From NCBI RefSeq assembly GCF_032062105.1, contig NW_026918070.1:62001-126000 (forward strand): DNA of 64,000 nt, read 5' to 3'. This DNA is from Saccostrea cucullata (Eukaryota). Each line of letters begins with the position of its first letter. Position 1 is the stretch's first letter. This document shows, one piece after another, positions 9,070 through 60,433 of this stretch. The notes beneath the pieces were generated by a model. The model had not been told where the DNA came from. It did no database searches and saw nothing but the letters and a program-made list of their open reading frames with translations. The translations under genes were made by a program, and so were the position numbers.

Positions 9070-9106
9070 ATGTCATCAACAAGTAAAATAACGTGTATCT
9101 TAACAT
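9070..9106 (+). CDS. Predicted first coding exon (start of signal peptide) of the otoancorin/mesothelin-like gene
   Basis: ATG at 9070 and a phase-1 GTGAGT donor at 9107. Spliced to 14784 it gives MSSTSKITCILTFLTLLVLITA-QQTPGPKPSGSC, a typical signal peptide. Confidence 0.7.
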
Positions 9107-12100: not shown

Positions 12101-15100
12101 AAAATGTTTTAATTTAAAATACTTCAATCTTAAGACAACACTATAAGAATTTTGCTGATATATAAATGTGCATTTTTCGCAAAACTTTTAGTGTATCTCT
12201 CTCATTCCTTAACACCGTTATTTGTATGCAGATTAACATTTCAAAGCTATTTTTGAGGAATTTAAATAATTATTTGTTTCATTCACTATGACAAAATGCA
12301 GAAAATATTACACGATATGAGAATGCCATGCAAAATAATGAATTAAGGAACAGTAAACTCAATTTTTTTTAAAAAAATGTTCTCTCAAGATAATCAAAGC
12401 CAGATTGGATCTTTGAGAAAAATTGAATTCCGGGCATTTCTCTCTGATAATGTGTGTCTGGGGATTTTAATTTATCCATCTTTATATTATTGTGCAGTCT
12501 TTACGGCTTTATCGCCATGATCAATATATCTGCCCAGGATCGAAGAATCAAAAGCATGATATCAACAGAATTCTATCAAAATAGGCCTTTTCTTCAATTC
12601 GTAATAACCAAAGAACAACCAGGAGGTCGAGGATAGACAGTGAATCTATACTTATAGTTTTCTAGATGTGTGTAATTTTTGCATTTCATAAACAGTGATT
12701 TGAACATATTTTATTGTATATACTTTACAATTTGGATTGGGCAAAAGTTCGAAAAACTTATTACGCCCTCTCCCTATATATACATTATACCAAACATATT
12801 TACACACATGGGTTTCAGCTTAAAATGAATAACACAGAAAAACATAATATATAATAATCAGAGTAAAACACATTCAATAGAATACAGTCCATATGTAATA
12901 AACATGCTGTATAAGATTTACAATTAGAAATAATTATTGTATCAACCAAATCGTCTTGAATTTTTAATAAAAGTTTTTTACAATAGAAAATAGGTATTCA
13001 TTTTCAACATCATTTAACGATTTGTCTCCCCAGAGTAAAGTGTGAGTATCGACAGTGTGTAATTTACCCATTCGCAAAAATTTGTCAAAAAATTCTTTCC
13101 TGGCTTCAGAAATAATGATGAGTATCCTCTACTCTTCCACAAGAACATAGTGGACTCAAGATTACATTACATCCAAAAAGATCGCTATTTAGCACGCAGT
13201 TATGTCTAAGCCTCGTGTGAATTATATTTAAGCGTCGAGTTCCATAACTAAAGTAAGAGGGTGGCATTTGTTTATTGTAAGAAATAGAGTTTTTAAAAAT
13301 AGATAACGAGGAAGAATTTTTTACATTAAGAGGTAATGAGTTCCATTCTTCAATAACAAGGGGAACGAAAGTTGACTTGTAAGCTTGCAATCAACATTTG
13401 GGTATATTATAATTCTGCGAGTTTCTCGTACTGTAACTTGATGAATTACATCGTAAGTTTGGGATTATATCAGTTAGATATTCAGGAACTTGGTTTCTAT
13501 CAATTTTATACATTGTAGTTAGTCTAGTCTTTTTCCTTCTTTCATGCAATGGTTCCCATCCATTTTCAAAGTAAAGTGCATCTTTAGAAGCTAACAGAGT
13601 TAAGCCTGTGACAATTCTAGCAGCACATAGTTGTAATTTTTCTAATTTTTCGCTGTCACCTACATTACATCCACCCCACACCAAGGAAGCGTATTCTAAC
13701 TGTGGCAGTATTTAAAAGATACAAGTTTCTCTTTTTTTGATTTTTATTTTTTGAAATTTACGGAAGGCTATTTAGAACCTAACTAAAATATTTGTTAGAA
13801 AATGATTTTATATTTAATTTCATGTATTACGACAAATATGTAGAATTTATTGTTATTTTCTTTTTAAACAATCTTATGAAGAATGAAATTCTTAGTGAGT
13901 CTATTTAGAATTAATCAAACATATATTTCAATTCGATATAACAAATAGTGGAAGTTGTAAAAAAAAAATGAAAATAATTCGTTAAACAATTCTTGCAATT
14001 GTTAAATTAGTAATACATTGTATGACACTCCAATATTTTTATTTCAATTAAATTTGTTTAACCAATTTTAAACTTAAAATTATCATAATAAATTCGTTTA
14101 AATCATTTCTTATATTAAATTCGTTTAAAAGATCTAAACTTGTTTTATTGAAATATACATTTTAGGCCAATAACATATTATCTACAATCCAATAAATTGA
14201 TTTTCCAAAATTATATCAACGAATTTAATTCGTTTTAAAAAGTATAAATCTTTATTTTAAGCATATTTAATTAGGAATTTGAATTAAATTCTAGATGTTG
14301 TCCATTTAATTTATTCTGTTAAAGCAATTTCTTGCATTCGTTATTATGAATTCAATATCATTTTTACTACTATTCGTTTTAAGAAATTAAACAAAAATGA
14401 TTTAAAAATGACCTAATGAATTTGTGTAACGAATTTCACCAATTTTAATTTTGAATTCAAAAAGAATTCTTTTATAAGTCCTTTATTAGGTATAATAAAA
14501 TTCCTTTCAACTATTTCAATACTGCATACATGTAATTTGCAATTGTTCACTTTGTTTCAATGCATCTCTAAATCTACTTAAAACATATTCCATTCTAATA
14601 AGTTTTGACATATTTCAATTCTGTGAGAACAAGTTAAAATTTCAATTTGCTTCTTGTTACTTAGTATATTAATATTCTAATATAAATAATTTATTTATAA
14701 ATGTACAATAATTCATTAGTTTATGTCAATGAAATGTTGTCCTAAGGTGTTATATTTTTATTATATAATTATTCTATTTACAGTTTTGACGTTATTGGTC
14801 CTAATAACAGCACAACAAACTCCAGGACCTAAGCCAAGCGGATCTTGTGGTAAGTAAAATATAAACTACCTAATTAATGATCAATACGAACGCAGTAATA
14901 TCCTGGATATGGACAAAGCAAGTGTAGAATTAAGTTTAACGAAAATGCAACAATTAAGTATACCCCGAACTTATAAGTATGAATATAGAGTGCGATACTC
15001 ATCTATATCTTGAACCCGTGCATATAGTAGCGTGTTGAAAGAAAACTCACATCATGTAATTCTTCTGTTAGTTTACCACCCGATCTGGTGGATCATGTTG

Positions 15101-18100
15101 TGTATGAAATCAAGTTGTATATAAAGGACTCATCTTTTTTCATTCTGGGTAAAGTCACATCTCGATTTGACAAACTGAGTCCAGTTGTCACAAAACCAGT
15201 GAATATAGTCCCCAGTGAAATGTTCCCAGCCTCATTGATCATTAGGTCAAATCAAGTCATTCAACACTTTTTTTTTACATGAATTCAATGCCTATATATA
15301 AGATTAGATCATTTTTTCAATAATGATTGAATATGCATATACTTAACGTAAGATGTTTTTAATATCTCAGCAAACACCACTGGACTCCCCTGTCCACACG
15401 TCTGTCCGTGTTATGAGAAAAAGGCTCCCGAGGACTGCTTCTCTTTTGATGAGTTTGGGAATCCGTTGCCATGCCCAATGATAGATTTCAATGTAACTCT
15501 ATCCAGAGCCAGAAACGAGACTTCAGAGGCGGAAGGTAGGAATCTTGGAATATCATTCATAAAATCATATCATTTTCAGTAAATATTTAATATTTATGTA
15601 AAAGTTGAGCAGGGAATAAAAACAGAATCACGTAAGAAATCTGGGCTTTAAAAGAAAAATTAAAGTATCCATGTGTTTTAAGAAAAATCATTGTATTGAC
15701 ATACGTCAGTCTGAGATGTTATTCTCCTTTTAAAATAAATGTTACCTAGAATTTTAGATAATTAATCACATTTCTTTCGAAGATAACTATTGCAATAAAT
15801 TCGATTTAGATAGTCGGGTAAGGAGATTTTTGCAGAAGCTTACAGTTCGACACAGGGGAATTCCTTAAAAGCTCTTTTTCAAATATTAAAATAGTTTTGA
15901 ATTTTTTATAGACGTAAATTTAAATTGTTTTTTTTAATTCTTGTGCAGGATCTAAATACTAGTATGTTCACTTTTAAGTGAAAATATTCTAGATATAATC
16001 CGTTGTGAAATTATTCGTTTTCAATCAGATATCTGATAAATACGTTAAAGAAATTTTGGTTTCCTTCACAAAATACTTCTTATTTCTTAATTTCAAAGTG
16101 TTTGTCTAACTTACAATTATTTATTTTCGCCGAATAAGAGATAAATAATAAATATAAAATTCTTTTACTGGTTTTAACTTTGTTCATAGACTAGTAGATT
16201 GATCATTTTACATTTTTTTGTTGTACTTATATTACTGCGAATACTTATTGTAGTCTTTGAGGCAAATTCTGTCATGGGTACATGTTCCCGCCATGCTAAG
16301 TATCTTGATACTTGGGCCAGACTTACAGATGACACAAAACAAAAGATTAAAAATTTCCTCTCCAACCCTGCCGACCCAAGTATCACCTACCAAGACATCG
16401 AGAAAATGCCCATCGAAGCTTTTTCTGCTGCTAACGTAAATATGGATTTAATACACACATAAATAGCGTTTTAATCATGGAATAGAATAATCGTGTTACT
16501 TAAAGTTAACTGACATTTACAGAAGACTTTGTGGCGAGAGGTCATGTCCAAGGCATCAGACAGACAAAAACTGGCTATTCAGATGAAGGTCATGACGAGT
16601 AAGGACTGTGAAGTTCAAAGCATGCTCAAAGGACTCAACTTTACCAAACTCTATCTGGTACTTGTTGAAACATTCTCAAATGGTGCATTAATGCTATTGG
16701 GTAAAAATTCATGTGAATGGTTTTAATTTACTTCATTTCTCATGTTTATTTGATAACAGGCCAGTGAAGCAAAGAAAGAGGTAGATGCTACCATTTTTGG
16801 AGAAGATCTCTGCCGTGCACTTCTGCATAACTGTTCATATCTACCACCAGAGCTCTTTACGTTCATTAACACCACAGCTCCAATTTGCTTCTTATATTTC
16901 GGTGAAGATTGCTTAGGCTCAAAAGACGGAATGAAATTCTTTGGTAGGTAATAAAATTTTATTACCGCGAGGAGGAATTTCTAAAACGAAGTAAATTATT
17001 GACAAACAAGTTGATGTAACAAGAATATCAGGAGTTTCGCTTAAAGTTACCATTTTGTAAGTTCTATGGTCGATGCAATGACCTTGTCAACAAGTACAAT
17101 TTATCATTGAGTCAAATGCTGACTGGCATATTTCATACTAATTGTTAGTCCATTATTTATACACTGAATTGGCGAGGGATTTTTTCATTATTTTCCGATC
17201 ATGAAATACAGCTCACTTCTCCATGGCACCTTATCCACCTCAAATGATTTAGAGGTCCGTTTTGCTCTGCTCCTATTTGAGCATACTTTATTTGAACAGT
17301 AACGTCAAGGGACGTAGGCAACTTGTGACTAAATCCATCATTCAATTAAATGGCCTGCTACACGCAAAATTAAATTAATCACAATAATTCATAAAAATAA
17401 CATTTAAGATAATGGATAGCTCATGTGCTTCTAAATTTCTCTATTTACTACTTGTGTAAAACACAGAACCAGGAATAAATATACATAGTTTTAGAAACTT
17501 TTTAGAAACATCTTTCTTATTGAATGGATTGTAAATGTGTGTTTCAATATTAATATTTTTATCATCTAGGTAATTTTACCGGATTGCCATGTCCAAAGGA
17601 GTGTCCATGCTACAAGGATAAGGGTATAGGAGACGGCTTCTCCTTTGATCAAAATGGACTTCCCCTACCGTGTCCAAATATAGACATGAATGTTACTCTA
17701 TCAAGGGCCAGGAACGAAACGTCAGAAGCAGGAGGTAAATCTTAAGAATAACCAAATGGCCTAGGAACAATGGGTCATGATATCTGAAAAAATGGTTGAG
17801 GAATAATGTAAAAATTACTCATCTTAAAATCTGTTGATATAGCGTAATCAATTGTTCATTTTTGAAAGATTTGTAATTAATATATGATAAAATATATTCA
17901 ACTATAAAAATAGGTACAAATTTCATTTTTCCTAATCATACTCTGCTGCTTTATTAAAAGCATATTTCAGATGTACTTGTAGTGGACTTTATTTTTAGTC
18001 CAGTTCTTCTATTGCAAATATACAGAGTATACAATATATAGTCAAAACAATGACAAGACCTCCCAGCAATAAGAAAAATCACAACAATGCACGTATAAAG

Positions 18101-21100
18101 AAATATAATATTTTTTCTTGCAATAAAAATAGATTAATCCATAAATTTTGAATTGAGATACATCAAACAATTTTCAAGGATTTTATTCAATGTAAACTAC
18201 TGCTTCAATAGACTCAATTAAAAAATAATAACATGCATGAATACTTAATTAAATCTTCGAAAAAGGGCGTAGGGAATCTTTTTTAATATCAAATGAATAC
18301 GTTTTTTACTTCAATGTAATTATGTATTTCTGATATTATATATTTACCACAATTTTGGTGATATATAAATTTTTAAAGAGTTATTTCATCGAGACAATGT
18401 CAATTCATTTGGGATAATATTAAAAATTAACAATTGCAAAAACATTCTACGATTAACGAGCATATATCGATCTGATGAAAAACTTATAGAATACAAACCT
18501 ACGAACATTGTATAAATACAGAACCTTGGAAGTTCCAGATGCTGGATCCATATACCCAGGGAATGGTAATAGTCCTAATCACCAATTATATTAACAGTCA
18601 TATCAATTCTTAACTAGAGTATGGATATTGATCACTGTTTTTTTATTTATTCATTTTACTCATTTTTCAAAGTTATTTTGCAAATTATTTCATAGAAACA
18701 AATCGATAAGAATACCAAGAGTATGATGATAATGATGATTGTTAATGGGCAGGGCTTCTAAGTTACATTAATGCTTTTTAAATAATAATGAAGATTATTC
18801 AATTGTGTTGTGGCAGGCATGACGTATTCCCTGACAAAACTTACTTTTGTTAACTATAGTTTATTGATTATAGTGTAATTTACATTTCACATCACTCAAT
18901 TTAATGTATTAGTATTTTACTAGGTCTTTCTGACTTGCCTTATTATGTCTTCGAAATATTCTTGTAGTGTTTGAGGCAAATTCTGTCATGGGTACATGTT
19001 CCCGCTATGCTAAGTATCTTGATACTTGGGTCAGACTTACAGATGACACAAAACAAAAGATCAAAACTTTTCTCTCCAACCCTGCCGACCCCAGTGTCAC
19101 CTACCAAGACATCGAGAAAATGCCCATCGAAGCTTTTTCTTCTGCTAACGTAAGTATGAATTCGATACACACAGAAATGGCTTTTCACACACATAAAGTT
19201 AGCGGAGAGTTTAACACAAAGCGAAGCTAATTCAAATTGAATGGAATAGCAAAATTTAGTCAAATGTCATAGGTACTTGTGCTATTTTTTGAAAAACTAA
19301 AAAAAAAGTTGCCATTATGTCAAATGGATTTGACATTTACGTAATTTGCAAATGACATTGTGGCCGGAGCAGGTCGCAGTAGCTGTCGTGTGAACGCAAT
19401 TTTATTCGCATTAGTTTGATTTGCATAAGTTTACTTCGCATTAATTTACTTTGAATTAAACTCTCCATGTAAACAGGGCATTAATTGACAAAAACTGGCT
19501 ATTCAGATGAAGGTCATGACGAGTAAGGACTGTGAAGTTCAAAGCATGCTCAAAGGACTTAACTTTACCAAACTCTATCTGGTACTTCTAAATAGTGTAT
19601 TAATGCTATTGGAAAAAGATTCATGTGACTGATGTCAATTTACTTCATTTCTTATGTTTATTTGATAACAGGCCAGTGAGGCAAAGAAGGAGGTAGATGC
19701 TACCATTTTTGGAGAAGATCTTTGCCGTGCACTTCTGCGTAACTGTTCATATATACCCCCAGACCTCTCTAGGTTCATTAACACCACAGCTCCAAATTGC
19801 TTCTCACATGTTTCTGAAGATTGCTCAGGCTCTAAAGACGGAATGAAATTCTTTGGTAAGTAATATAATTTGCTTACCAAAGTATTGGATTTCTTAGTAT
19901 AATTAGCATTGACTTTGATATTGTGCAATTTACTTTTCTATGATGATTACATGTGAAATATTGAAGAACTCATGACTGTGTAAGGGTGAAAATAATTAGC
20001 TATCCTCAGAAAAGTTAATAAATATATATCCCGGTGAGCTTGAAATAAAAGATATCATAAAGTTCTTCGGTTTGTAAAATTTTGACTTGCTGATTTATCT
20101 CTTTTTTTAAATATCTTGTATTCGACTTTTATGACCAGTATTTGTAAATTAGTATCGTGTAACTTATTAAAGATAAAAATATATGAGCATTTCTAGAGGT
20201 ATTTTTCACAATACATTATTGAAAATTTCAAGATAAAGGATATCTCACCTGCTTTTCTAAGCCATATTTTATCTTCGAGAAACACCGCAAGAAACTTAAT
20301 TTTTCTCAGTATTTGGAAACAAACATCTCTTTCTTATTATAGAATGTAAATGTGTGTTTCAATATTAATATTTTTATCTAGGTAACTTTACCGGATTGCC
20401 ATGTCCAAAGGAGTGTCCATGCTACAAGGACAAAGGTACAGGAGACAGTTTTTCCTTTGATCAAAATGGACTTCCTCTACCGTGTCCAAATATAGACATG
20501 AATGTTACTCTATCAAGGGCCAGGAACGAAACGTCAGAAGCAGGAGGTAAATGTCAAGCTTTAGAATAACAAAATGGCTTAGGAACAATGGGTCTGGACC
20601 TGTGAAAATAACAGGTTAAGGGATAATGTAGTAATTTCTAATTGAGGATAAGTAAATTCAAAGTGGTTAAGTTTCACACTTGTATAATTTTTCTTGTATA
20701 TATAATAAATTTCTTTAGCATAAGGGGTGTTTTGTGTTCTAAATATCACATTTGGTTTATACTTGAATTATACTTCTTCTTGTTTAAACTCAGCCAATAA
20801 GGACCCGGCGGATTCATAACATTAATCAAACACTTCCAATTATTTCCATGAGAGATAAAGTTACAATTTCATATTAGACACCCGACCCTAACTTTTATCT
20901 TTTCATATGTAACTATGTATTTATTTGGATATCTTCTCATGAAACACTAAATTTGTTTAGAATTACAATCGTTAAACCTCCTGACTTGTATTAAATATTT
21001 CACATTGTCTATTACTACATGTATTAAATTTCCACAAAAATATCTTGTAGTGTTTGAGGCAACTTCTGTCATGGGTACATGTTCCCGCTATGCGAAGTAT

Positions 21101-27100: not shown

Positions 27101-30100
27101 ACTTAAGAAAATGGATCAGTCTTACCGCTGCTACCCAGGACAAAGCCTTACAATATTTGAGGGATCCAAAGTCAGTGTCTGATGATGACGTCAAGAGACT
27201 TCCTATTGAGATATTTGCCATTGCCAATGTATGTTTGTTGTTTTGCTACATTTTACTTAACAGTGAACAAGCATGCTAGGCTTTCTATAATATTTATCAC
27301 AGAAATTTTCTTTGGCTGTTTCTCAGTAATTTGTGTATATATCATATGATTCATACACACAGTTTCACACTCAGAAATACTTTTTTCTAGAAAACTTTAC
27401 TTGATAATATAACACGACAAGCCTCTACTGATCAGAAGTTGTACCTGGCTACTTCCGCCTCCCTCACCAGAAGCTGTCAAGTCCAGGATCACCTCAGCTC
27501 ATTCAGCTTAGAACAAACATTTAAGGTAAAAATTGACTAGTGTTATATACCCATTACATCATGACAAAAAGAAAGAGCTATTCTAATCACCAAAATGAAT
27601 GTTATGAGTAAATATATATTTTATTTTTCAGGATGCAAAGCAATCTGGAGCCGTGGATTCTACTTACTTCAATGCTTCTTTATGTAAAGCTTTTATGGAT
27701 GGACAGTGTGATATGCCAATGAGCAAGTGGCAGTTTGCTGTAGATCATGCCCAGGAATGTCTTCTTGATAAAGCTGTCTGTCTCAAAGACGTCAATGACG
27801 CTACACTGGAGAATCTATTATCGTAAGATGTCCCTCTATCTTTCTGCTATATTTTCCAACTTTTACAAAATTATCCTTTGTTTAAGATTCATGCCTGATT
27901 TTTATACAAAAACGGGAAAAAATTAGAGTGTATTTGTGTGTTGAGAAAGAGACAGACAGACGAAAATAGGGAGCGAGATAGAGTGAGGAGTGAGAAAAAC
28001 AGGATCATGTCTTCTTTTTTTTCTTCGCTTACTGTATTTTGCTTTCGACTTTCTTTTAAAGAAAAGGGAAAGATTTCTTAATCAAATTTCTTCAGAAGAA
28101 GACATGCGTTATTCATTTATTGAGTCGTTTTTACTAACTCAGAAGTAAAATTTCTTCTAAAATACTGTTTATTAACACTTGCAGAGTTGAGTCCATGAAA
28201 GGGTTGTGCAACAAGACGAATATTGATGATAGATCGAAAGAGCTGTTCCAAAGCCGCTTAAATTCGTATCTCGGCAACAAGACCACGTTCACTTGTGATC
28301 AGGATTTCCTTCTTTTGATGAATCTGTGTAACTTGAAACCAAAATACGTGACAAAGTTTTGCACCAGTGCCAAAGTAAGATATATTTTGATTTTTATTTT
28401 AAAATTAAACTATGAAAAAGCATGAAAATTTGTTCTCAAACTATGGAAAAACATCAAAACCAATTGCAATGTTTATTTGCATAGTTGAGATAAAAAAAGA
28501 TTTTAAGAAAAATGAATGTCATAAAATGGATTAAAAATTAGTGCGTTTATTTGGCTTTGAATCTATCTATAAAACCAATGTCCGTAGAAAATTACAAATT
28601 TAATGCACTTCTCAGGAAGGCTACATATCGAATGCTACTCTAATTCTAGGGGCAAAGGTGAATATATTCCGTTTTGTGTGTATTAATGATTCTTTGTTTA
28701 AATCAATTCTTTTTTCAGGTTGCGCAATATACACCCTCAACAGAACAATCTCGAGAATGGGAAATCATAAAAACAGAGTACTTAAACAAACAACAAGTTG
28801 ACTTCTCAGCAATGGACAAAGCCACTCTTTCCTCGTAAATGTCTTATTTTTCTACTTTTTGCCTAATCTTTTGAAAACGGTTTCGAAAATTTTATAATCA
28901 GGCAAATAAGTGTCATGGTTGAAATGACACTTTAGTTCAAGTAAGAGGTAAAGACATGAATAAGATTAAAAATTTCCATGTTGAAGACGTACATATCATC
29001 ACATATTTCCATGAATTGAATGTTATATTGCATGTTTCATACGACGAGCTTAATAATTTTCATATGTTTAAAATAATCATATGTAAGCTTATCTCCCCGT
29101 GACGCAGCTGATAGGCACAAAATTATTCCTGTAAGCAAATTTACTCCTAATCATTGACATATGCAATTCGATTATTCATATGCAGCATTTAAGATTAATC
29201 TTCAGTATTTCTTGCTTTTCATCAAACTTTGTTTTCCCTTCATTCTCAAATTTTTAAAAACTATTCATCATTCAGTTTAGAAATTTTTAGAAATTGATCT
29301 GGAACGGTGCTTGATTTGTGGTTTTCTGTTTATTAAGTTCAATAAAGTCTCTCTCCTACAAGGAGATATTTTAAAAGCAAACTTAGAAATAAACTGTTTT
29401 AGATAACATATGCTTACAGAATGCGTGGTTAATTTACTTTTGCACACATACGCAAATCTGCTAATGAGTAAAATACGATATTCTTACATATCTTTTGAAG
29501 GTATTTACCGATTTCAAAGTCCACGATGAAATCCCTGGATGCTGCAGTTCTAACAAAAGTCAAAGACGCAGTTTGTACAGATAATGTTTTGGATAATGCC
29601 AAATTCACCGATGGACAGGTGAGCCTATCAACAAAACATAAAATTGCGAGATAACAAATAGGTAACCTTGTGAGGAGTAAGGTATTGCTTTGAATTTGTT
29701 TTATAATCAGATATCTCATTATTGTATGTTTGAATCGACGTCTAATTTACAAAATACGTTTAAAGATTTTCACTTATCTCTCCTTTATGTTTGATCATTT
29801 ATTGCATTCAATTGAATAGAAAAACCTAGAAGTACATGTTTTGAAAAGAATAGTCACTGATATACATTGCTACAAAATTGTATAGATACGAGAGGTGATG
29901 GATGTGCTTCGAATCAAAGGAAAGCTGGACAAGACTACTGACAAAGATTGTCTGCTGAAGTATGTCCCAGCCGAGATTGTCGACTCCTTGTCCGATTCTG
30001 ATTTAACAACGGCTTATAATCAGAACAAAATTAATGTAACCAAACTTACTCCACCTCAGGTAAGCTTCCTTCTATCTCAAAAGTATATCCACAAATCTTA

Positions 30101-33100
30101 CTCCCCACTCCACTGTTGGTAAGCTATCAGTTTAATATCCACAAATCTTACTCCCTGCTCTTCTTTAGGTAAACTAACAGTTTAAAATCCACACAAACTC
30201 TCTCCACCTCAGGTAAGCTTATTTAGTATCCACCAAAATCCTTCCAACTCAATGAGGCATTAATATCAACCAGACTCACTCCGCCTTAGGTTAGCTACTT
30301 TAAACCTCAGGAATGACGCCTTAATATCATGCAAATCACATGTGTGCGGACTTATGTTAAATAAGTTGAAACGACTAAACCAAAACACATTCATTATTTC
30401 TCATCAACAACTACTTGTCAAATAATATCAACCAACGTCAACTTACCACGTCTCACCATGATAATAGGAAACTCATCAAAACCGTATCGTACCTGGAGTT
30501 TTTTATTTTATTTTACATGTATAATAAAAATAATTATATATGTATTACTATTAAAAATAGTTTCAGTATCTTTCTTTTACAAAGAAATATATATTTTTTT
30601 TATCTCCACGTATTTCATGCAATTATTACTTTCTTATGCCTTAATCTAATTCTGTTCATATTTCAGGCTAAAAGAGTTTTGGTACTAATAAGCGGAAGTG
30701 TATGTATTTTACGATTCATTTAAACTAAAATACTTACATTTTGTTTAAAATATATGATGAAGAAAATGACAGTTTCCTCATTAATTTTGTGTACAGTTGA
30801 CATCAGAAACACAGATCAAAGATAATGCCGACCTGTTAGTAAGGGGCGGATCCAACTCTCTTCCCTCACTCAAAGACAAGTCTGCAGAGACCAAGAAGGC
30901 ATACATTAAGAGTATAAAGAACCAACAGCAAGAAAATAAAGTGAACCCCTCTGTTGTCACGGCGGTGGTAGAAGCGGTAAGGCACCAATGACGTGGAAAA
31001 ATATATTGTTATTAACTGACAGAAAGTAAAACAATAATTAATTAACTGTTGTATGAAGTGGATTTCGACATAAAAAATACAGAAATACTTTGTTTAATTC
31101 TAGTCCTTAGACACATCTGATCGTGAAGGGTCTTTTAAAACGCTAGCATCCGAATCCTCAGAGGATATGATGAGTTTTATACCACCAGATTTCATTACGG
31201 ACATGAGTTCATCAGATGTTCAAAATCTCGCCAGTTGGCCCGACTTGAAGTCGGTTAAACTCCCAAAGAATCTGGTAAGTACTTCGTTCATTTCTTACCG
31301 ATATATATGTATTTTATTTATTCTAAGGTCTCTGATGATTCTTCCTTTTCTATGAACCAGGGAAAAGCTTTGATACAGAAAGTACAAGACACTGGAATAG
31401 CACTGAACGACCCTGACGTCGTTTCCAACCTGGTGGCAGTGGTAGGATCCGCACCCAAATCCCTGTTTAACACAATAGACACAAATAACGCCAACTGCCC
31501 CACAATTCTATCATCGGTCGCTGAATCAGAAGCCATTTCAGCAGAAAAGGTCAATTTTGTCACATATATAATTACAATATATTCATTTACCCCTGCTTTG
31601 TCTAGAAAACTCTATATAATAAAACTAGACAAACACTAAAGCTGTAATTAATTGTTAACCTAACTAATTATTATTTCTTTATTTCAGTACGAGCATGTGT
31701 GTAAGAAGTTAGAGACCTGTCTGACTTCCACCAATGTAGACCTCTCTGATGCTTCCTCGCTTTCCGGGAACGCTCTAGCCTGCTTCAAGTAAGACTTGTC
31801 GATGTTTTCGACTTAAGTTCATATTATAAAATAAATTTAACAACTGGTTATTGGTTTTTTTATCTTATCTTTTAGATGTACATTTTTTGTATGTCTTATG
31901 GTTCCTTAATTGACTATAATCTTAAATGACTAAGTCAAAATCTGAATATTTTCGTATAGTGAAATGTAATGATGATCATGATAAGAGGAGATTAAATAGT
32001 TCTATAGGCACTGAATAGCATTGGTTAGATTAATTTTATCACCAAAACTATTCGTGCATGAAAATTAAGATCGTTAAGCATCCCTAACTTCCTAAACTGC
32101 ACATATTTAGACTTCATTTTCATCCCAAACTCAATTGTCTTCATGAAGAAAGGTTTTCTCTTAAGTAGACCAACAATAATGTGCACTCAGGATGCACTCA
32201 GTGTGTAGTGTCAGGAAGATGGCAAGAGTGAACTTAAAAATTTTCCCCAAAAACTTCCAATGACAGGGGAAGAACGAGGGACATTTATTAGTGTTATGTT
32301 CCATCTCTTATTATGATGTTTTTGACAGTAAAACTGCGCTGAAGGCTGTTAGTGGGAGTTGCTCAGATATAACAACAAAGATGTGCACTGCTGACTTCTC
32401 ACTGCTGGATGGAAAACAGAGAAAAAGTGAAATCAAAGAATACGTCTTTGAATGTGTGCGTATTATTTATACTCTTTATTCTCTAGCACAATGTGTCCGT
32501 ATCCTTGTAGTTGTCTGATTTTCTTTCTTCTTCATAAATTCATACAATTGTTAGATTTTTATGAATAGAAAAAACAGTTCCAAATTTTTAAAAAGGAATA
32601 AAAGTATTTATACCAAATAAGGTTATGGTACATATTTTTTTGCTGTGTGAAATTGTAATTATCAAATAAAGGAACAAACCAAATTTATATGAACCAAAGG
32701 CTATTGTTGTCATTTGAATCTTTATCTAATACTCAGTAGCTTAGTACTTTAAAGATGACCAAATCATCTCAATTAATTTTTAGGAAAGCGTTTCTAAATC
32801 ATAAAAAAAAAAGCAAGAATATTAATACAACCTTGTCTGTTATATTTTTCTGGTTCTTTTTCTCCACAGCTAGGGATTACTAACACCATTACTGGCTCAC
32901 ATATTAACAGTATGGGAAGCTGCGCAGAACTGTTGTCTGACTCTGATATTCCCAAGATGGACATAACAGCCATGGAAGCCATCTTTAATATTCTCTCCTC
33001 CAAATTCACTTGCCTGAGCAAGATTGGTGCCTACGTCGAAAAATATGTTACTCTGTAAGTCTTTACCTGTCATCTTCAGACTTAATGCGTTGCAGTTAAG

Positions 33101-36100
33101 TTTTTCAGCAAAACAGAAATTTCGTTAATTCTTAATTTACATTGAGTGTGAGTTGATTGGCGGGATTTATATCTTTTAAATATAACTTCTTAAAAGAGAA
33201 AGCATGTACACTATTATGAAAGCTGTTCGTGTTTTTTTGTGGTTTAACAGAAAAGGAAGTACCATAACAACTACTGACATCGTCCATCTGGGCGACTGGG
33301 CTATACATCTACAAAGCAGCTTATTTTCGGGCATGGTAAGTACATCTGGGTTCATTTCACCTCCAACCTCTGATGTTTTGGAGGTCCCTGTTTGCTCTGC
33401 ACCTATTTTGTATTGTTTACTGGATTTCTGAGCTTGAATACTGTTCGTTATCTCCATATATTTCATTCAATCAGTAGTCCACACTAACCTTCTTTAAATT
33501 GACATTTACATTTCATGTTAATATATTAAAGACGGGAATCTGTGATACTGTATCCACCATTGGGGAAGCTCTAAAGGAAAGAGACGCCATAAAGCAGGAA
33601 CTCATAGAAGAAGGATTGTTTACTGAGTGCAAAGAAGAAATCAGTGAAATCAAAAAAGAAATCGGGGAATATATCATCGCCGCCATAGAAGACTGTACCG
33701 CAGCCAGACGACGGAAGAGAAACACAGGTAGATTTTGTTTATAGTAAGCACTTATGCATCAAAGTCTAGGGCTTCTATGGACAAACTTTGAAAAATTGGT
33801 TTTGGTTTATATTTGCAGGCACTATCACGTGTTCTCAGCTAACTGACATGGGGTCGTCCATGCTAAGTTCCCTGACAACTTCACAACTCTCCGGAATCCA
33901 GGATGCTGATTTTATCCAATGTGTGAGTTTACTGGGAAGCCCGACCGATTACAGCGCAGAGCAGAAACAAGCTCTAGCCAGCATTGCCAAGAGAGGAACG
34001 GTGAGAAAAGGAAGATTTTTTTTAATTTAAAAAATAGCAATGCAAGGACTCCTAAATAATTAATGTTATTATACTACCGGTTATTGTGACTGCTTAGTAA
34101 AGAAAAGATATATATGCACATCTTCGACATTTACTACTAAATTTTTATGTAAATAAAAAAATAACAGAGTGTCATGAAGATCCTCTTGTTCTCAGGTGTA
34201 TGGTAGTCCAAGCACGTGGTCGTCCTCCACAATACAGAGTCTGGGGTCAATCGTCCAGGGTCTGACCTCGGCGGAACTTGACATGATGACCTTTATCTAT
34301 GACGACATTGCGCAGCTCGGGGCGTACTCAGGATGGGAGGACTCGCAGGTTTGTCTCATTGCCTGACTCCACGGCGTCAGGCACTACTAAGGATCAATAT
34401 TTCCTAGGTGTGAAGCTAAGAGGTCACAGTTAGCCAGCAAAAATGTGTACATGCTGATTATCATCGGATTTTCTTACATGCGTTTCAGCAATAACAGTTA
34501 GCAGAAAAATAACCATATTACTGATACAATATATTGATGTATTTACTTCCTTTAGCTTTTTGCTAGCAGCTATTTATTTCTTACGAGTTCTTTCACAAAC
34601 ATGTCCGTTTGACCTTTTTTGCGTTTCTATACTACTGGATTAATCCATTTGTCCTCTATGTAAGGGGTGACACAATTATTTTGCGCCAAAATGTCAGGTG
34701 TACGTTTTTGCGCCCTTTTCCTGGACTTTATTAGTATGCTATTGAATGGAAATGAAAACTGCATGAATGATATAAAGTTTGTTCTTTTTTGTCGGAATCA
34801 TGGTCGAGCTTTGGAAAAAAAAACATATCGGTGATATGTGAAGTGAGTTAGAAGTTGCATCATTTAAAGTAATAAAAACGAAACGAACAAAAATCTCTTA
34901 AGATGATGCACTGGCCAAATATACATCTGATCATAACCCCCCTCCCCCTCCAGGGGGTTTCCTCCCACAAAAACAGAGTATATAGACTAATAAAAGTGTC
35001 TTCTCACATTTCAGGATTGAGAAAGTTTATTATTTTTTTGCTCGTACAAATATTTTTGATGTGGACCCTTCATCTCTGGGAAACCCTCCCTGAATCCGCG
35101 CCTGTCGCCATTCATATATCGCCTTCAAGTTTGTTGGGTCATTTAAGCATATATAGCTTTATTTATCCCACGTTTCCAACAATCTTTGATGCTCTGGCAT
35201 ACCCAAGAAACTATTAAACATATTCTGCATGTCAGTCATAACCGTTACGATTCCCAATTTCTTGTAGTTATATTTTCAGCTGTCTTTCTCAAAGCCTATG
35301 CTGTATGCAGTTGAATCTAATTTATGTAACCTTTAAATATAGCCATGCTTTCCAGCAGTAATCAGTTACATTAGTTTTCCCCTTATTTTCTTCATCCTAT
35401 AAAACCATTTTTAGACTCGCGGAGTGAGTTGTTCATCTTTACGTCGCGGGTTCAAATCTACAGCGGGACATGTACAAGATTTCATTTTCATTTGAGATAC
35501 AAACAATTTATATAAAAAAATGTTTTCTTTTTCCATTGCTCTGATGTGTATCATATAACAAAATAAATGCATGATGTTTTGTGCAACATCTTCATAATTT
35601 ACACTAGTGAAACAATTTAGACACCCTCCCCCCAATGTAAACGTTTATAACTTATCATGTTATAGGTTCTATAAATATTGATCGCATTAGTCAGGCAAGC
35701 TTTTGAAAAGCTGTTACTTGTATATCACTCAAGTCAGTCATTTTGAAAGTAACAAAACATGTTCTCTCTCAATCGTTCTATATCGTTCTTAATTTTAGAA
35801 AACCACCATATTTGGAAATTGGACTAAGTCGAGTACCATAGCAACTATAACATCATCAGAGCTGAGGTCATTAGGTCACATGATTTGTGCAATGTCTACA
35901 GGCCAGATATCCCAAATTACCCAAGCTGTTTATGAGTAAGATGTTAAAATTTATCATAAATTGTCTTTATTTTATCAAGCACAAAAAGAAATATTTTATC
36001 ATAATTTGGGAGTATATTGTCGCAAATGTATATACATCTTAAAGTTATTGAAAGCGAAAGATGTTTAATAAATAAGAATTCATCTAATAAGTATGAAATT

Positions 36101-38659
36101 TATCCTGAAATTAATTCCTGACAAGCAGTCTTAATGTTTGCTATCTGAATTAAAAGCTACTGAGTGCCAATACATATCTACTCGTATATATTCATTACCT
36201 TTAAAACATGTCAGTAGATAATATTTCAGAATTTGTATTTCTGATAGTATTTGTGATTTTTGATACCATACTCTAAATAACGAAACAACAAAACTACGAT
36301 AATGAAAAGAAGGGGTTGAATAAACATCCCCCTCCCAAAAAAGTTTAGTATTTGAATTCGACTCTCGGGGAGGTTAAAATATATTGAACATAAAGTAAAA
36401 TAATCTATTCAGTACTAATTAATAATTAACAGAGCATCTGCTGATAAGGTTGGGGAAGTGACGAGCTGCAGTGATACTCAGATGGTAGAATTTGCCAACC
36501 ACGCCAAGACTGCTTTTGGTAATGTGTACAACTGGACGAGTGTCCAAGTCACCAACGTCGGGGCTCACATCGGTAAGATGCAAGATCGGGCTAAACGTTT
36601 ACCATCACACGTGTTTATTGAGCAAATTGTTTCAAAACATAAAATGAGATAACTCATAATGACATAAATTTATATTATTATTCCTTTATAGACTTGCCAA
36701 GTAAAAGTGTTTTCTTATCTACTTTTGTTGCACAAGCTATGCTAAATTGTTTTGTATTTTGCTTATAAATACATTTCTTTTGAAAAATTATTAAGGTTCA
36801 AGCAATTTTATATGAGTGAGCAGATGGTTTATGACCCGTAATATACGTTATGTTTTATTTGTTGCTAGGTGGCCTTATTAAAAATTATGTTTTATTTCGT
36901 CACTAGGTGGCCTCAGTAAGACGGAGATCGCCACGTTGACTGAGGCTCAGATTGATGAGATTTTAGCCTCTCACGTTACCCTTATTCCATCCTCAGTGTT
37001 TTCAGTGAGTGTGTTGTTAAATTACAGAGTAATATTATTAGATGTACTCATACAGAAAACTTTAAATTAATTGTTGAGAGAAGATTGCCTCTAAACTTTT
37101 AAAGATAATTTTTAGGTTTTAACAATCCATGAATAGTTGTCTCGATATATAAATCACCATTGTTTGATCAATGGCTTTCAATTCATCACTTTCAATTCAA
37201 ATAAAAACTAAGATACATTTTGTTGATCTAATCTTAACACATTTTCTGTGATGTTTCTAGGGTTTTACTGCTACTCAGCTGGGAAATTTCAGTCCAGCTC
37301 AAGCGCAAGCCACCACCACCACTCAAAGATCCACCCTGGATTCTTCACAAATGTCGGCTCTAGAGAGCGCTGCGGGCGTCAGTTTCTCCAGCTCCAGTGG
37401 AGGTATGAGTTATACTGCTGTACACATGGATTTCACAATTTACAGTTATAATCTCCATTGTCCTGAACATAGATAACGAGTTATACTGCTGTACACGTGG
37501 TTGTCACAATTAATAGTTATAATCTCCATTGTCCAGTACACAGATTAGGAGTTACACTGCTATGCACGTGGTTGTCACAATTTACAGTTATAATCTCCAT
37601 TGTACTGTACACACAGATTAGAAGTTATACTACTGTATTCGTGGTTGTCACAATTTAGAGTTATAATCTCCTTTGCCCGCAGATTAGGGGTTATACTGCT
37701 TACATGTGGTTGTCACAATTTACAGTTTTAACATAATCTCCATTGTCCACAGATAAGGAGTTATACTACTGTGCACGTGGTTATCACAATTTACAGCTAT
37801 AATCTCCATTTTACTGTACACAGATTAGGAGTTATACTACTGTACACATGGTTGTCACAATTTACAGTTATATAATCTCCATTGTCCAGTACACAGATTA
37901 GGAGTTATACCGCTGTACACGTTGTTGACACAATTTACAGTTATAATCTCCATTGTCCAGTACACGGATAAGGAGTTATACTGCTGTACACGTGATTGTC
38001 AAAATTTACATTTATAATCTCCATTGTTGTGTCCACAGATTAGGAGTTATAATACTGTACACGTGGTTATCACAATTTAGAGTTATGATCTCCATTTTAC
38101 TGTACACAGATTAGGAGTTATACTGCTGTACACGTTGTTGTCACAATTTACAGTTATAATCTCCATTGTCCAGTACACAGATAAGGAGTTATACTGCTGT
38201 ACACGTTGTTGTCACAATTTACAGTTATAATCTCCATTGTCCAGTACACAGATTAGGAGTTATACTGCTGTACACGTTGTTGTCACAATTTACAGTTATA
38301 ATCTCCATTTTACTGTACACAGATTAGGAGTTATAGTGCTGTACACGTTGTTGTCACAATTTACAGTTATAATCTCCATTGTCCAGTACACAGATGAGGA
38401 GTTATAGTGCTGTACACGTGATTGTCAAAATTTACATTTATAATCTCCATTGTCCAGTACACAGATTAGGAGTTATACTGCTGTACACGTGGTTGTCATT
38501 CTAGCCTATACTGTTTAACAATATATTCAATTCCAAATCTACATTCTATTCTTAGTACACTTAGTACAGTTTATTATTTTCTTTTTTTCAGTTGACCGCG
38601 CTGTTCAGATGTCATGGTTGGCTGTCTCTCTGTCCGTGCTCCTGGCCTTGTTTCTCTAG
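9070..38659 (+). CDS. Large GPI-anchored mesothelin/otoancorin/stereocilin-superfamily protein with six N-terminal tandem Cys-rich modules (about 46 coding exons, about 2,320-2,345 aa)
   Basis: Hand-spliced GT-AG exons with compatible phases and no internal stop: 9070-9106, 14784-14849; M1 15371-15535, 16254-16435, 16523-16657, 16760-16943; M2 17570-17734, 18968-19149, (19507-19581 damaged), 19672-19855; M3 20382-20546, 21051-21232, 21842-21976, 22079-22262; M4 22486-22650, 24026-24207, 24290-24424, 24527-24701; M5 24870-25031, 25577-25758, 25846-25980, 26080-26482; M6 26774-26944, 27053-27228, 27391-27525, 27632-27822; then 28185-28374, 28719-28834, 29501-29618, 29886-30059, 30667-30699, 30797-30976, 31104-31274, 31361-31549, 31688-31788, 32329-32455, 32870-33054, 33251-33335, 33532-33727, 33819-34000, 34196-34348, 35799-35935, 36433-36572, 36907-37004, 37261-37402, 38592-38659 (TAG). 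The C-terminal motifs VYGSPSTWSSSTIQSLG, LRSLGHMICAMS and AFGNVYNWTSVQVTNVG resemble mesothelin (YGPPSTWS) and otoancorin/stereocilin repeats. The protein ends SSSSGVDRAVQMSWLAVSLSVLLALFL, a GPI-type tail. Family assigned by motif recall, not by database search. Confidence 0.85.
10805..11160 (-). mobile_element. Penelope-like retroelement 3' fragment in intron 1
   Basis: Well-preserved copy of the conserved 3' block plus antisense of the RT C-terminus. Confidence 0.7.
12697..13712 (-). mobile_element. 5'-truncated CR1/L2-group LINE (ORF2 C-terminus plus 3' UTR), decayed
   Basis: ORFs 13391-13684 and 13106-13390 read LEYASLVWGG..LEKLQLCAARIVTG..GWEPLHERR..EEWNSLP..RLRHNC.LNSDLF..SPLCSCG.VEDTHHYF with an in-frame stop between them. 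The 3' tail ends ..acaataaaatatgttcaaatca. Confidence 0.85.
16965..17292 (+). mobile_element. Penelope-like 3' fragment in intron D1-A2
   Basis: gtaagttctatggtcgatgcaatgaccttgtc (KFYGR-type RT C-terminus) followed by a degenerate 3' block. Confidence 0.65.
21306..21824. mobile_element. PIF/Harbinger-type MITE with TTA TSD (decayed copy at about 19190-19480)
   Basis: TIRs tgccccttcacacggagag / ctctccatgtaaacagggca, with TTA on both sides. The empty site aaagttaactgacatttacag is visible in module 1 (16502-16522). Confidence 0.8.
22850..23158 (-). mobile_element. Full-length tRNA-derived SINE with a V-domain-like core
   Basis: A box ggcgcagtggt and B box ggttcgaatcc, core ggtccttcggatgagaccgtagaaaccgaggtcccgtg, and a perfect 14-bp TSD tgtagaatttgatc (22836-22849, 23159-23172). 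Confidence 0.88.
23366..23947. mobile_element. Non-autonomous DNA transposon (Kolobok-like termini) in intron A4-B4
   Basis: Imperfect TIRs aaagaactatatgcggta..gccccc / gggggc..taccgaataaagttcttt. Absent from the paralogous intron at about 20945 (acactaaatttgtttagaattac). Confidence 0.65.
33340..33462 (+). mobile_element. Short Penelope-like 3' terminal fragment in an intron
   Basis: acctctgatgttttggaggtccctgtttgctctg...tactgttcgttatctccata matches the family 3' end. Confidence 0.65.
37407..38497. repeat. 71-bp minisatellite (about 15 copies) filling the last intron
   Basis: Unit ggagttatactgctgtacacgtggttgtcacaatttacagttataatctccattgtccagtacacagatta. Period measured at 38114/38185/38256. 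Confidence 0.95.
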
Positions 38660-59946: not shown

Positions 59947-60433
59947 GATCAAACCCCGCTGACTGCCATATTCCTCCCTTTTTAAAGGTCTTCGGCCCCC
60001 TGAAAGACCCCAACTCAGGCCCATCCCTGGCAGGCCTCTCACCTGTCCAATCCTGGTCATGGCACCAAATCTGTATCAGAAAGGGAGAAAATGAATGCTT
60101 GGACCAGGAATCAAACCCTGGACCCCTGCATCACTAAGTCAGGTGCTCTACCAACTGAGCTACCCAGGCTGATATCCTTGGTGCAAATCATTACATTCCT
60201 CGCTCCTTAAATTGTCTTCAACCTCGAAGACACAACCAAAGAACCTATTAGCCCCTGTCAGGACTTTCACCTACAAGTCCAGGATCGGTCAACGGCACCA
60301 AATCTGTAACAGGATAGAAGAAAAATGCTGCAGACCAGATCGGAATTCAAACTCGGGCCCCCTGAAACTCTGGTCAGGTGCTCTACCAACTGAGCTATCT
60401 GAACACTGGTGTTTGAACCTAGCTGATTGCCAC
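59947..60433 (-). mobile_element. Tandem TRIM with tRNA-derived LTRs (Helenus-type), right part of the array
   Basis: On the - strand: LTR TG..CA 60433-60305 with A/B boxes, PBS tggtgccgttgacc 60300-60287, PPT aaggagcgaggaa, LTR 60195-60072 with A/B boxes, PBS tggtgccatgaccagg 60067-60052, PPT aaaaagggaggaa, then the next LTR from 59970. Confidence 0.75.

What the first reader, a model, noticed from the sequence alone, without database searches (positions are those of the whole stretch)
9070..38659. Giant GPI-anchored mesothelin/otoancorin-like protein with a six-module N-terminal array
Seen: a continuous reading frame of about 2,330 aa with a signal peptide, six Cys-rich modules of about 220 aa, a P/T/S linker, a helical region, RRRKR and a GPI-type tail. 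Established: vertebrate mesothelin, otoancorin and stereocilin are helical-repeat surface adhesion proteins, and I know of none with such an array. Inference: a lineage-specific multivalent adhesion or recognition protein whose repeated module matches no domain I recognise. Possible roles are gamete recognition, ciliary/mucus tethering or immune recognition.
Basis: partly seen in the sequence, partly recalled or inferred. Interest (0 to 1): 0.8.

Follow-up and report, generated by a model that had tools for sequence, protein, structure and literature searches.

The report
Oyster stereocilin/mesothelin-like protein with module array
This is a real, expressed oyster gene for a large cell-surface protein of the stereocilin/otoancorin/mesothelin kind, in which oysters have multiplied the family's own N-terminal helical domain into a species-variable array; it is an interesting variant of a known family, with no tested function.

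Summary
A 44-exon gene on the + strand (14723-38659; Saccostrea cucullata LOC134242870) encodes about 2,328 aa. In order it has:
- a signal peptide;
- five closely related four-exon Cys-rich modules (module 2 has a broken exon C);
- a P/T/S linker;
- a sixth, divergent module;
- about 625 aa of alpha-solenoid;
- an invariant RRRKR;
- a 308-aa conserved domain with a GPI-type tail.

The coding sequence starts at 14723, not 9070. The linker lies between modules 5 and 6, not after the array.

RNA contigs from a close relative confirm 13 splice joints. Single contigs bridge the array, module 6 and the helical part.

Family assignment is supported but remote:
- Pfam Mesothelin passes its cut-off on the post-furin part.
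- Mussel and scallop homologues pass Pfam Stereocilin, and a mussel one aligns end to end with module 6 onward.

The module matches no Pfam family or solved fold. Its model is confident (pLDDT 88.6): a Cys cap plus ARM-like helices.

Every other bivalve homologue found has one module. Only this oyster orthologue group has an array, with 3 to 6 copies depending on species. Distal copies cluster by species, and dN/dS between them is 0.11-0.26.

RefSeq models lack the first 380 aa. Function (apical matrix or mucus tether) is inferred only.

The parts
14723..14849 (+). First coding exon. It carries the start codon, a hydrophobic signal peptide and the ...PKPSGSC junction, and ends in phase 1.
   Evidence: Aligns with the N-termini of the C. 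gigas and S. echinata orthologues. An in-frame stop lies 2 codons upstream of the ATG.
15371..16943 (+). Module 1 (exons A 15371-15535, B 16254-16435, C 16523-16657, D 16760-16943).
   Evidence: Module HMM score 429 bits.
17570..19855 (+). Module 2 (A 17570-17734, B 18968-19149, D 19672-19855). The exon C remnant 19489-19581 has lost its acceptor and first 14 codons through a 51-nt deletion.
   Evidence: RefSeq isoforms X1-X3 all start at a Met inside this remnant.
20382..22262 (+). Module 3 (A 20382-20546, B 21051-21232, C 21842-21976, D 22079-22262).
22486..24701 (+). Module 4 (A 22486-22650, B 24026-24207, C 24290-24424, D 24527-24701).
24870..26482 (+). Module 5 (A 24870-25031, B 25577-25758, C 25846-25980, D 26080-26482). 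The 3' part of exon D (about 26251-26482) is the P/T/S-rich linker ending ...QFSGC.
   Evidence: An RNA contig covers 26079-26480 and runs on upstream into an exon C. Orthologous to the last distal module of S. echinata.
26774..27822 (+). Module 6, the ancestral membrane-proximal type (A 26774-26944, B 27053-27228, C 27391-27525, D 27632-27822).
   Evidence: RNA joints D5>A6>B6>C6>D6. Orthologous across five oysters. Aligns with the single module of mussel, scallop and pearl-oyster homologues.
28185..33705 (+). Pre-furin alpha-solenoid region, 13 exons: 28185-28374, 28719-28834, 29501-29618, 29886-30059, micro-exon 30667-30699, 30797-30976, 31104-31274, 31361-31549, 31688-31788, 32329-32455, 32870-33054, 33251-33335, 33532-33705.
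   Evidence: RNA joints for the first nine junctions. Identical to RefSeq P0001. AF2 pLDDT 70-87 and all-helical. Foldseek top hits are HEAT/ARM solenoids.
33706..33720 (+). RRRKR, a candidate furin/proprotein-convertase site.
   Evidence: Invariant in five oyster orthologues. A basic R-x-K/R-R site lies about 310 aa from the C-terminus in all nine other bivalve homologues.
33721..38591 (+). Post-furin conserved domain (rest of exon 33532-33727, then 33819-34000, 34196-34348, 35799-35935, 36433-36572, 36907-37004, 37261-37402). It holds the YGxPSTW motif and short L-[ST]-x-x-Q-[IL] repeats.
   Evidence: Pfam Mesothelin 31.4 bits. 41-93% identity across 14 bivalve proteins with an invariant ITSSELRSLGH. 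The repeats match PDB 9zem 'HeliScrew4' at E 3.5e-7 and Pfam ALTTAQ_rpt in 4 of 14.
38592..38659 (+). Last exon: spacer plus a 14-residue hydrophobic tail (GPI-attachment-type signal) and the stop codon 38657-38659.
   Evidence: The tail is conserved in kind in all 14 homologues.

Best explanation
The locus is one real gene, Saccostrea cucullata LOC134242870. It encodes a secreted, heavily N-glycosylatable protein of about 2,330 aa that probably carries a GPI anchor. It belongs to a family conserved across pteriomorph bivalves and is a remote relative of vertebrate stereocilin, otoancorin and mesothelin.

The ancestral layout, kept in all bivalve homologues found, is: signal peptide, then (in the longer homologues) an extra N-terminal stretch, then ONE Cys-capped ARM-like helical module, then about 600 aa of ARM/HEAT-type superhelix, then a basic convertase site, then about 300 aa of conserved domain ending in short helical repeats, then a GPI signal. 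In the oyster lineage, one paralogue has multiplied the module. The four-exon block is phase 1-1 and its introns still share sequence, so unequal crossing-over can add or remove whole modules in frame. The result is 2 to 5 extra distal copies, placed beyond the mucin-like linker. Their number differs between species, and they are either homogenised or independently amplified within species.

Inferred mechanism, not shown: the protein is processed at RRRKR as the mesothelin precursor is. Its GPI-anchored stub holds, or releases, a long ectodomain whose stalk presents several identical binding modules. Like otoancorin and stereocilin, it would tether an acellular glycoprotein layer (mucus or another apical matrix) to an epithelial or ciliated surface, and the array would add avidity or reach.
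For: Gene model. 44 exons with consistent phases and GT..AG sites. The last 1,948 aa are identical to RefSeq isoform X1.

Transcription and continuity. Spliced contigs in 4 runs from 3 studies (two runs on record as RNA-Seq, the other two only guessed to be RNA), 90-99% identical to the window, reproduce 13 joints. Single contigs of 3.4-4.0 kb bridge the exon C/D5 linker, module 6 and the helical region.

One frame from signal peptide to GPI tail is also annotated in S. echinata, C. virginica and C. gigas.

Family.
- PF06060 scores above its cut-off on the post-furin part, and matches in 5 of 5 oysters.
- PF21058 scores above its cut-off in mussel and scallop homologues.
- Module 6 onward aligns end to end with the mussel protein at E 7e-105.
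- The 1149-aa model is an all-alpha solenoid and its top Foldseek hits are HEAT/ARM solenoids.

Module.
- AF2 model at pLDDT 88.6 and pTM 0.82.
- Only weak ARM-like matches.
- Copy counts of 6, 5, 4-5, 4 and 3 in five oysters, and one copy in nine other homologues.
- In the tree, the proximal module is orthologous across species and the distal copies group by species.
- dN/dS between distal copies is 0.11-0.26.
- Introns share repeat families between modules.
- The B-exon profile finds only this cluster and short fragments among 1.84 billion representative proteins.
Against: - Exon C of module 2 is broken in this assembly. The full frame needs exon skipping, which was not observed.
- The RNA evidence comes from a close relative, not from this species, and covers only 26-32 kb.
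- The link to vertebrate mesothelin rests on a 43-residue Pfam match. Profile searches of PDB sequences did not find mesothelin.
- The post-furin part of the model has pLDDT below 50, so no structural comparison with solved mesothelin was possible there.
- Signal peptide, GPI anchor and furin cleavage are read from sequence and conservation, not from a predictor or an experiment.
- No tissue, localisation or ligand data exist. No paper mentions these loci.
Confidence: 0.8

Rival explanations
1. In this individual or haplotype the gene is damaged. The 51-nt deletion in exon C of module 2 would make transcripts either stop after about 380 aa or be degraded. Alternatively, translation would start downstream, as in the RefSeq models, giving a protein without a signal peptide. 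The six-module protein would then not be made from this allele.
For: The deletion removes the acceptor and 14 codons, and the nearest upstream AG leads into an in-frame TGA. NCBI's pipeline could only start its three isoforms at a Met inside the remnant.
Against: Exon C is 135 nt and phase 0-0, so skipping it keeps the frame. Exons A2, B2 and D2 are intact, with dN/dS of 0.11-0.26 against other copies. All orthologues are intact. O. edulis models also contain modules that lack part of the unit.
Confidence: 0.12
2. The array and the C-terminal stereocilin/mesothelin-like part are two separate genes or transcripts, fused only on paper.
For: RefSeq models do not reach the signal exon. RNA support was obtained only for 26-32 kb.
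Against: Single spliced contigs run from an exon C through D5 and the linker, module 6 and on into the helical exons. S. echinata, C. virginica and C. gigas models run from signal peptide through 3-5 modules to the GPI tail in one frame. No stop, terminator-like gap or second signal peptide lies between the parts.
Confidence: 0.03
3. The protein is made as described, but the distal array is a fast-evolving recognition surface (gamete, self/non-self or microbe recognition) rather than a matrix or mucus tether.
For: Copy number differs between every pair of oyster species compared, and distal copies group by species. From my own knowledge, oyster sperm bindin likewise carries a variable number of tandem lectin repeats.
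Against: dN/dS between copies is 0.11-0.26, with no sign of diversifying selection at this coarse level. No lectin or immune domain was detected. The contigs' word depth in the RNA runs was high, but such depth is a poor measure of expression and the tissue is unknown.
Confidence: 0.2
4. The number of modules is an assembly artefact, with a tandem repeat either expanded or collapsed.
For: The assembly is fragmented, with 23,869 contigs. Tandem arrays are error-prone.
Against: Copies differ at dS 0.19-1.0 and have introns of different lengths and contents, so they are not duplicated reads of one unit. Chromosome-scale assemblies of four other oysters also show arrays.
Confidence: 0.05

Closest known systems
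Mesothelin precursor (MPF + mesothelin; Pfam PF06060)
   Same: A secreted all-helical ARM-type protein (PMC2628672). A basic convertase site splits an N-terminal part from a C-terminal part of about 300 aa that ends in a GPI signal. The Pfam model matches the YGxPSTW region above its cut-off.
Otoancorin and stereocilin (Pfam PF21058 Stereocilin)
   Same: Large (1,100-1,800 aa) GPI-linked helical-repeat proteins that attach acellular gels to apical cell surfaces (PMC2628672). The single-module bivalve homologues have the same size range and pass PF21058. Automatic names 'Otoancorin' (C. gigas) and 'Stereocilin' (Mizuhopecten) have been given to family members.
   Different: This protein's own pre-furin region does not reach PF21058. 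No tandem array of an N-terminal domain is known to me in the vertebrate proteins. I could not test whether the module corresponds to their N-termini.
Single-module bivalve homologues (oyster paralogues LOC111119099 and LOC133204464; Pinctada, Pecten, Argopecten, Mizuhopecten, Ylistrum, Mytilus)
   Same: The layout from module 6 to the GPI tail is the same. There is an end-to-end alignment, 41-51% identity in the post-furin domain, and a basic site at the same distance from the C-terminus.
   Different: They have one module. This orthologue group has 3-6, the extra ones lying distal to the P/T/S linker.
ALTTAQ repeat proteins (PF20080) and PDB 9zem 'HeliScrew4'
   Same: The last 70 aa or so before the GPI site are short L-[ST]-x-x-Q-[IL]-type repeats. 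They match 9zem at E 3.5e-7, and bacterial ALTTAQ proteins at E 6e-6.
   Different: Only this short membrane-proximal stretch is alike. The matches are to bacterial or unidentified repeat proteins, with no sign of common function.

Membership tests
Mesothelin/MPF family (Pfam PF06060) | Match to the family HMM at or above the curated gathering score | tested here: met
   P0001:1440-1751 scores 31.1 bits and P0001:1444-1751 scores 31.4 bits, against a cut-off of 25.8. All 5 oyster orthologues match at E <= 0.01. However, the match is one 43-residue stretch, the whole 1751-aa protein scores 24.0 (below cut-off), and only 3 of 14 bivalve homologues match at E <= 0.001.
Stereocilin family (Pfam PF21058) | Match to the family HMM at or above the gathering score | tested here: inconclusive
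   There is no hit on this protein's pre-furin region or on its four orthologues, even at E <= 1. Homologues from Mytilus (36.1 bits), Argopecten (29.6) and Mizuhopecten (28.7) pass the 26.6 cut-off. This protein aligns end to end with the Mytilus one at E 7e-105.
Mesothelin/stereocilin/otoancorin superfamily | Predominantly helical ARM/HEAT-type superhelix | tested here: met
   The AF2 model of 1149 aa is all helices, with pLDDT 70-87 over residues about 65-730. The best Foldseek hits are karyopherins, CAND1, SF3b and other solenoids at E 5e-5 to 6e-4. The post-furin part has pLDDT below 50.
Mesothelin/stereocilin/otoancorin superfamily | N-terminal signal peptide and C-terminal GPI-attachment signal | not testable with these tools
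   No predictor was available. By inspection there is a 20-residue hydrophobic core followed by ITA|QQ. At the C-terminus an SSSSG run, an 8-residue spacer and a 14-residue hydrophobic end are conserved in kind in 14 homologues.
Mesothelin precursor | Furin-type cleavage separating a shed N-terminal part from the GPI-anchored part | tested here: inconclusive
   The RRRKR motif is present and invariant in oysters. A basic site lies at the same distance from the C-terminus in nine other homologues. Cleavage itself is not testable here. The position relative to the PSTW motif differs from what I remember of the human precursor.
Mesothelin (solved structures 8cx3, 4f3f) | Structural superposition on solved mesothelin | tested here: inconclusive
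Armadillo repeat fold (for the module) | Significant structural match to ARM-repeat proteins | tested here: inconclusive
ALTTAQ repeat (Pfam PF20080) | Tandem short repeats matching the family HMM | tested here: inconclusive
   This protein scores E 0.27-0.9. Four of 14 homologues match at E <= 0.001. The family profile matches PDB 9zem at E 3.5e-7 over positions 209-278.

The most novel reading that the evidence does not exclude
The Cys-capped helical module is a new extracellular domain family of bivalves. Its oyster-specific array, amplified or homogenised separately in each species on top of a mucin stalk, would be a rapidly evolving multivalent recognition device (gamete, larval-settlement or microbe recognition). 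Copy number would tune specificity or avidity, making this an invertebrate case of a stereocilin/mesothelin-type protein turned into a variable receptor.
Probability: 0.15. Interest if true: 0.7.

Novelty: new variant of a known kind. Interest (0 to 1): 0.45.

Why it matters
- Stereocilin, otoancorin and mesothelin are medically important vertebrate proteins (deafness, cancer targeting). Their molecular mode of binding and their evolutionary origin are poorly understood.
- A clearly related and strongly conserved bivalve family keeps the signal peptide, solenoid, basic site, conserved C-domain and GPI layout. It offers an outgroup for working out which parts are ancestral.
- The oyster gene shows how such a protein can gain valency by in-frame duplication of a symmetric four-exon block. 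It also defines a 220-aa module that can be modelled confidently and has no Pfam family.
- In practical terms, the RefSeq models of this gene are truncated at the N-terminus and lack the signal peptide.

Tried and rejected
- Exon-by-exon Pfam scans gave nothing but one faint Mesothelin hit.
- phmmer and profile searches of PDB sequences never found mesothelin.
- The ESM Atlas search by features gave no usable hit. The search by shape gave TM <= 0.41.
- hhalign of the module profile against the pre-furin and post-furin profiles was not significant (E 0.16 and 0.25). Internal homology of the module to the rest of the solenoid is therefore not shown.
- A word search with the alignment of module 6 to the C-terminus found only oysters.
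No phase-compatible acceptor was found, and there was no orthologue similarity upstream of 14.7 kb.
- The look-up of encoding contigs has no record for the RefSeq isoform.
- Searches of earlier findings returned nothing.
- Five literature searches for the locus names, K1RK31, otoancorin plus oyster, and mesothelin-like plus bivalve found nothing relevant.
- ORFs in introns and flanks that looked like mobile-element remains gave no Pfam hit.
I rebuilt the model from coordinates only.
- The joined 2,328-aa model was used only inside local scripts. It was sent to no search or folding tool. The database protein P0001, identical over the last 1,445 aa, served as proxy. The first 380 aa were searched exon by exon only.
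Full report
**What is there**

The window is G000:C207:62001-126000 of a 1.17-Gb assembly. A database protein encoded here is named 'uncharacterized protein LOC134242870 isoform X3 [Saccostrea cucullata]'. The window is 28-39% G+C and has no N.

Stop-free segments on the + strand between 14.7 and 38.7 kb contain a four-part peptide series that recurs six times, followed by unique helical-looking segments. I listed all AG/GT sites compatible with the frames and chained them into a first model. I then corrected that model at three places using orthologous proteins and RNA joints:
- a 33-nt micro-exon at 30667-30699;
- the acceptor of the next-but-one exon at 31361;
- an extra exon at 33251-33335, together with the strong donor at 33054.

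The result is 44 coding exons spanning 14723-38659, all GT..AG, and 2,328 aa with 87 Cys and 49 N-x-S/T sequons. Its last 1,445 aa equal P0001, and its last 1,948 aa equal RefSeq isoform X1.

**Anatomy**

- The first exon (14723-14849) encodes a short basic N-region, a hydrophobic core of about 20 residues, and ITA|QQTPGPKPSGSC. It aligns with the N-termini of the C. gigas and S. echinata orthologues.
- Each module is four exons: A (phase 1-1), B (1-0), C (0-0) and D (0-1). A whole module is therefore phase 1-1.
- Modules 1-5 are 59-95% identical to one another. Module 6 is 33-46% identical to them.
- Ten Cys positions are conserved.
- Exon D of module 5 runs on into a P/T/S/M-rich stretch of about 75 aa ending QFSGC, which echoes the end of the signal exon. 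The linker thus separates modules 1-5 from module 6.
- After module 6 come about 625 aa of helices, RRRKR at 33706-33720, and 308 aa ending in SSSSG, an 8-residue spacer and a 14-residue hydrophobic tail.

**A defect**

In module 2 a 51-nt deletion, flanked by a short direct repeat, removes the acceptor and the first 14 codons of exon C. The next AG upstream leads into an in-frame TGA. Exon C is 135 nt and phase 0-0, so skipping it keeps the frame, and that is how the 2,328-aa frame is obtained. All three RefSeq isoforms (1973, 1751 and 1751 aa) start at a Met inside this remnant. They therefore lack the signal peptide, module 1 and half of module 2.

**The 5' end**

I found no phase-compatible join to the signal exon and no orthologue similarity upstream of 14.7 kb. 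The stretch 9070-14722 is thus unverified as part of the coding sequence.

**Is it transcribed as one unit?**

The run search found only small shares of the sampled words. Laying four runs (three studies) on 26001-32000 showed spliced contigs 90-99% identical to the window, which points to a close relative rather than this species. Two of the four runs are on record as RNA-Seq; the other two are only guessed to be RNA. Thirteen joints coincide with my junctions from D5>A6 to the 31549>31688 junction, exactly or within the stated ambiguity.

One 3,432-nt contig covers D5 with the linker, module 6 and the helical exons, and its loose 5' end reads like the end of an exon C. A 4,021-nt contig runs from before module 6 past 31788 into the next exon. 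The contigs' word depth was about 1,000 in two runs of 120-138 million letters, but such depth is a poor measure of expression and I do not rank expression by it.

Single frames from signal peptide to GPI tail are also annotated in S. echinata, C. virginica and C. gigas. The 'separate transcripts' refutation therefore fails for the part that could be tested.

**Relatives and family**

A profile of the six B exons was searched against 1.84 billion representative proteins. It found only P0001 (whose 50% cluster would take in the other oyster orthologues, at 58-92% identity), short unnamed fragments, and two unrelated repeat proteins.

Word searches with P0001 gave orthologues in S. echinata (2193 aa), O. 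edulis (2134), C. virginica (2073) and C. gigas (1784; also K1RK31, 'Otoancorin').

A search with the post-furin domain added:
- oyster paralogues (1232 and 1292 aa);
- proteins from Pinctada, Pecten, Argopecten, Mizuhopecten (named 'Stereocilin'), Ylistrum and Mytilus;
- two bacterial ALTTAQ-repeat proteins.

Pfam results are as follows.
- Mesothelin PF06060 scores 31.1-31.4 bits (cut-off 25.8) on the post-furin part, and matches in 5 of 5 oysters. The match is a 43-residue stretch around YGxPSTW.
- Stereocilin PF21058 passes its cut-off in the mussel and two scallop proteins, but not in this protein.
- P0001:603-1751 aligns with the Mytilus protein over 1,231 columns at E 7e-105. The alignment includes the module, the basic site and the tail.

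The post-furin domain is 41-93% identical across 14 bivalve proteins, with an invariant ITSSELRSLGH. Its last 70 aa or so match PDB 9zem 'HeliScrew4' at E 3.5e-7, and ALTTAQ_rpt in 4 of 14 members. Solved mesothelin was never found by sequence.

The S. cucullata genome has three loci with this domain: this one, C10327 (which also has one B-like exon) and C21329.

**The module**

There is no Pfam hit. AlphaFold2 on an alignment of 16 modules gave pLDDT 88.6 and pTM 0.82. The model has an irregular Cys-rich first 35 residues or so, followed by 13 short helices.
- Foldseek against PDB: best E 0.67. Full-length mesothelin 8cx3 came fourth, at E 0.96.
- Atlas search by shape: TM <= 0.41, with several ALTTAQ-repeat clusters.

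All of these are below what the tools treat as meaningful for helical repeats. The module is ARM-like in appearance but matches nothing specifically. hhalign of the module against the rest of the protein is not significant.

The 1149-aa model (module 6 to the end) is an alpha-solenoid with pLDDT 70-87 up to residue 730 or so and below 50 after that. Its Foldseek hits are generic HEAT/ARM solenoids.

**How the array evolved**

A module HMM counts 6 modules here (one without exon C), 5 in S. echinata, 4-5 in O. edulis, 4 in C. virginica and 3 in C. gigas. It counts exactly one in each of the nine other bivalve homologues, always ahead of the solenoid.

I built a maximum-likelihood tree of 19 modules, leaving out the partial ones. 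It splits 100/100 into two clades:
- a proximal clade, with one module per oyster;
- a distal clade, in which C. gigas and C. virginica copies group by species (100/98 and 100/99).

The last distal module is shared by the two Saccostrea species, and the upstream ones group by species. Introns of different modules still share repeat families. Between distal copies dS is 0.19-1.08 and dN/dS is 0.11-0.26, so the copies are kept under purifying selection and are not assembly duplicates.

The phase 1-1 block, together with a signal exon and a linker that both end in ...SGC in phase 1, explains why blocks can be gained or lost in frame.

**Mechanism**

Shown: the gene structure, splicing of the 26-32 kb part, family relations, copy-number differences, and constraint on the copies.

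Inferred from the family (PMC2628672 for the vertebrate proteins): secretion, GPI anchoring, convertase cleavage at RRRKR, and a role as a tether between an apical cell surface and an acellular glycoprotein layer, with the array on a mucin stalk adding valency or reach. I put about 0.8 on the identity and architecture, and no more than 0.35 on the tether role specifically.

**Novelty**

The genes are annotated only as 'uncharacterized' (or automatically named), and no paper mentions them. The family assignment is therefore not new in kind. The array, its species-specific copy number, the definition and model of the module, and the corrected 5' end are new. I rate it a new variant of a known kind, of moderate interest.

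**Limits**

The joined spliced model was used only in local scripts and was not sent to any search or folding tool. P0001 and its parts served as proxy, and the first 380 aa were searched exon by exon.

Noticed in passing
window 19425-19581: A 51-nt deletion relative to modules 1, 3 and 4 removes the acceptor and first 14 codons of exon C of module 2. It is bounded by a short direct repeat (GACA). All three RefSeq isoforms of LOC134242870 start at a Met in the remnant, so they lack the signal peptide and 380 aa.
   Followed up: partly
window 37407-38498: A minisatellite of 15.4 copies of a 71-bp unit (85% matches) fills most of the last intron, just upstream of the GPI-signal exon.
   Followed up: no
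G000:C10327:243137-256229 (-) and G000:C21329:346739-348907 (+): Two paralogous loci carry the post-furin domain. The C10327 locus also has one B-like module exon 12 kb upstream, and its C-terminal domain has only short introns.
   Followed up: partly
L017:6718-8667 (ENA metagenome assembly contig k141_514553, 14.7 kb, 34% G+C): An unnamed contig carries an A-like and a B-like module exon, 33-39% identical to the oyster modules. It is presumably DNA of another mollusc in an environmental sample.
   Followed up: partly
P0037, P0038 (bacterial proteins): Bacterial ALTTAQ-repeat proteins (one fused to a calpain-type protease) score E 6e-6 and 1e-4 over about 88% of the oyster post-furin domain. 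P0037 also gives a faint Pfam Mesothelin hit. This may reflect shared short L-T-x-x-Q-I repeats rather than ancestry.
   Followed up: partly
window 60096-60169 and 60332-60404 (-): Two tRNA-like matches (Rfam RF00005, 38.4 and 32.6 bits) lie 236 nt apart, outside the gene. They may be tRNA genes or tRNA-derived repeats.
   Followed up: no
window 33176-33466 (-) and 10773-10919 (+): Similar peptide strings (...KQYK.GAEQT.TS.TSEVG...) appear in stop-free segments at two places, suggesting a dispersed repeat. At 33.2-33.4 kb it overlaps, on the opposite strand, a coding exon (33251-33335) that is conserved in all oyster orthologues.
   Followed up: no
P0012 (O. edulis), P0013 (C. virginica), P0011 (S. 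echinata): The P/T/S linker is itself a tandem repeat whose length differs greatly between species: about 75 aa here, about 105 in S. echinata, about 220 in C. virginica and about 390 in O. edulis.
   Followed up: no
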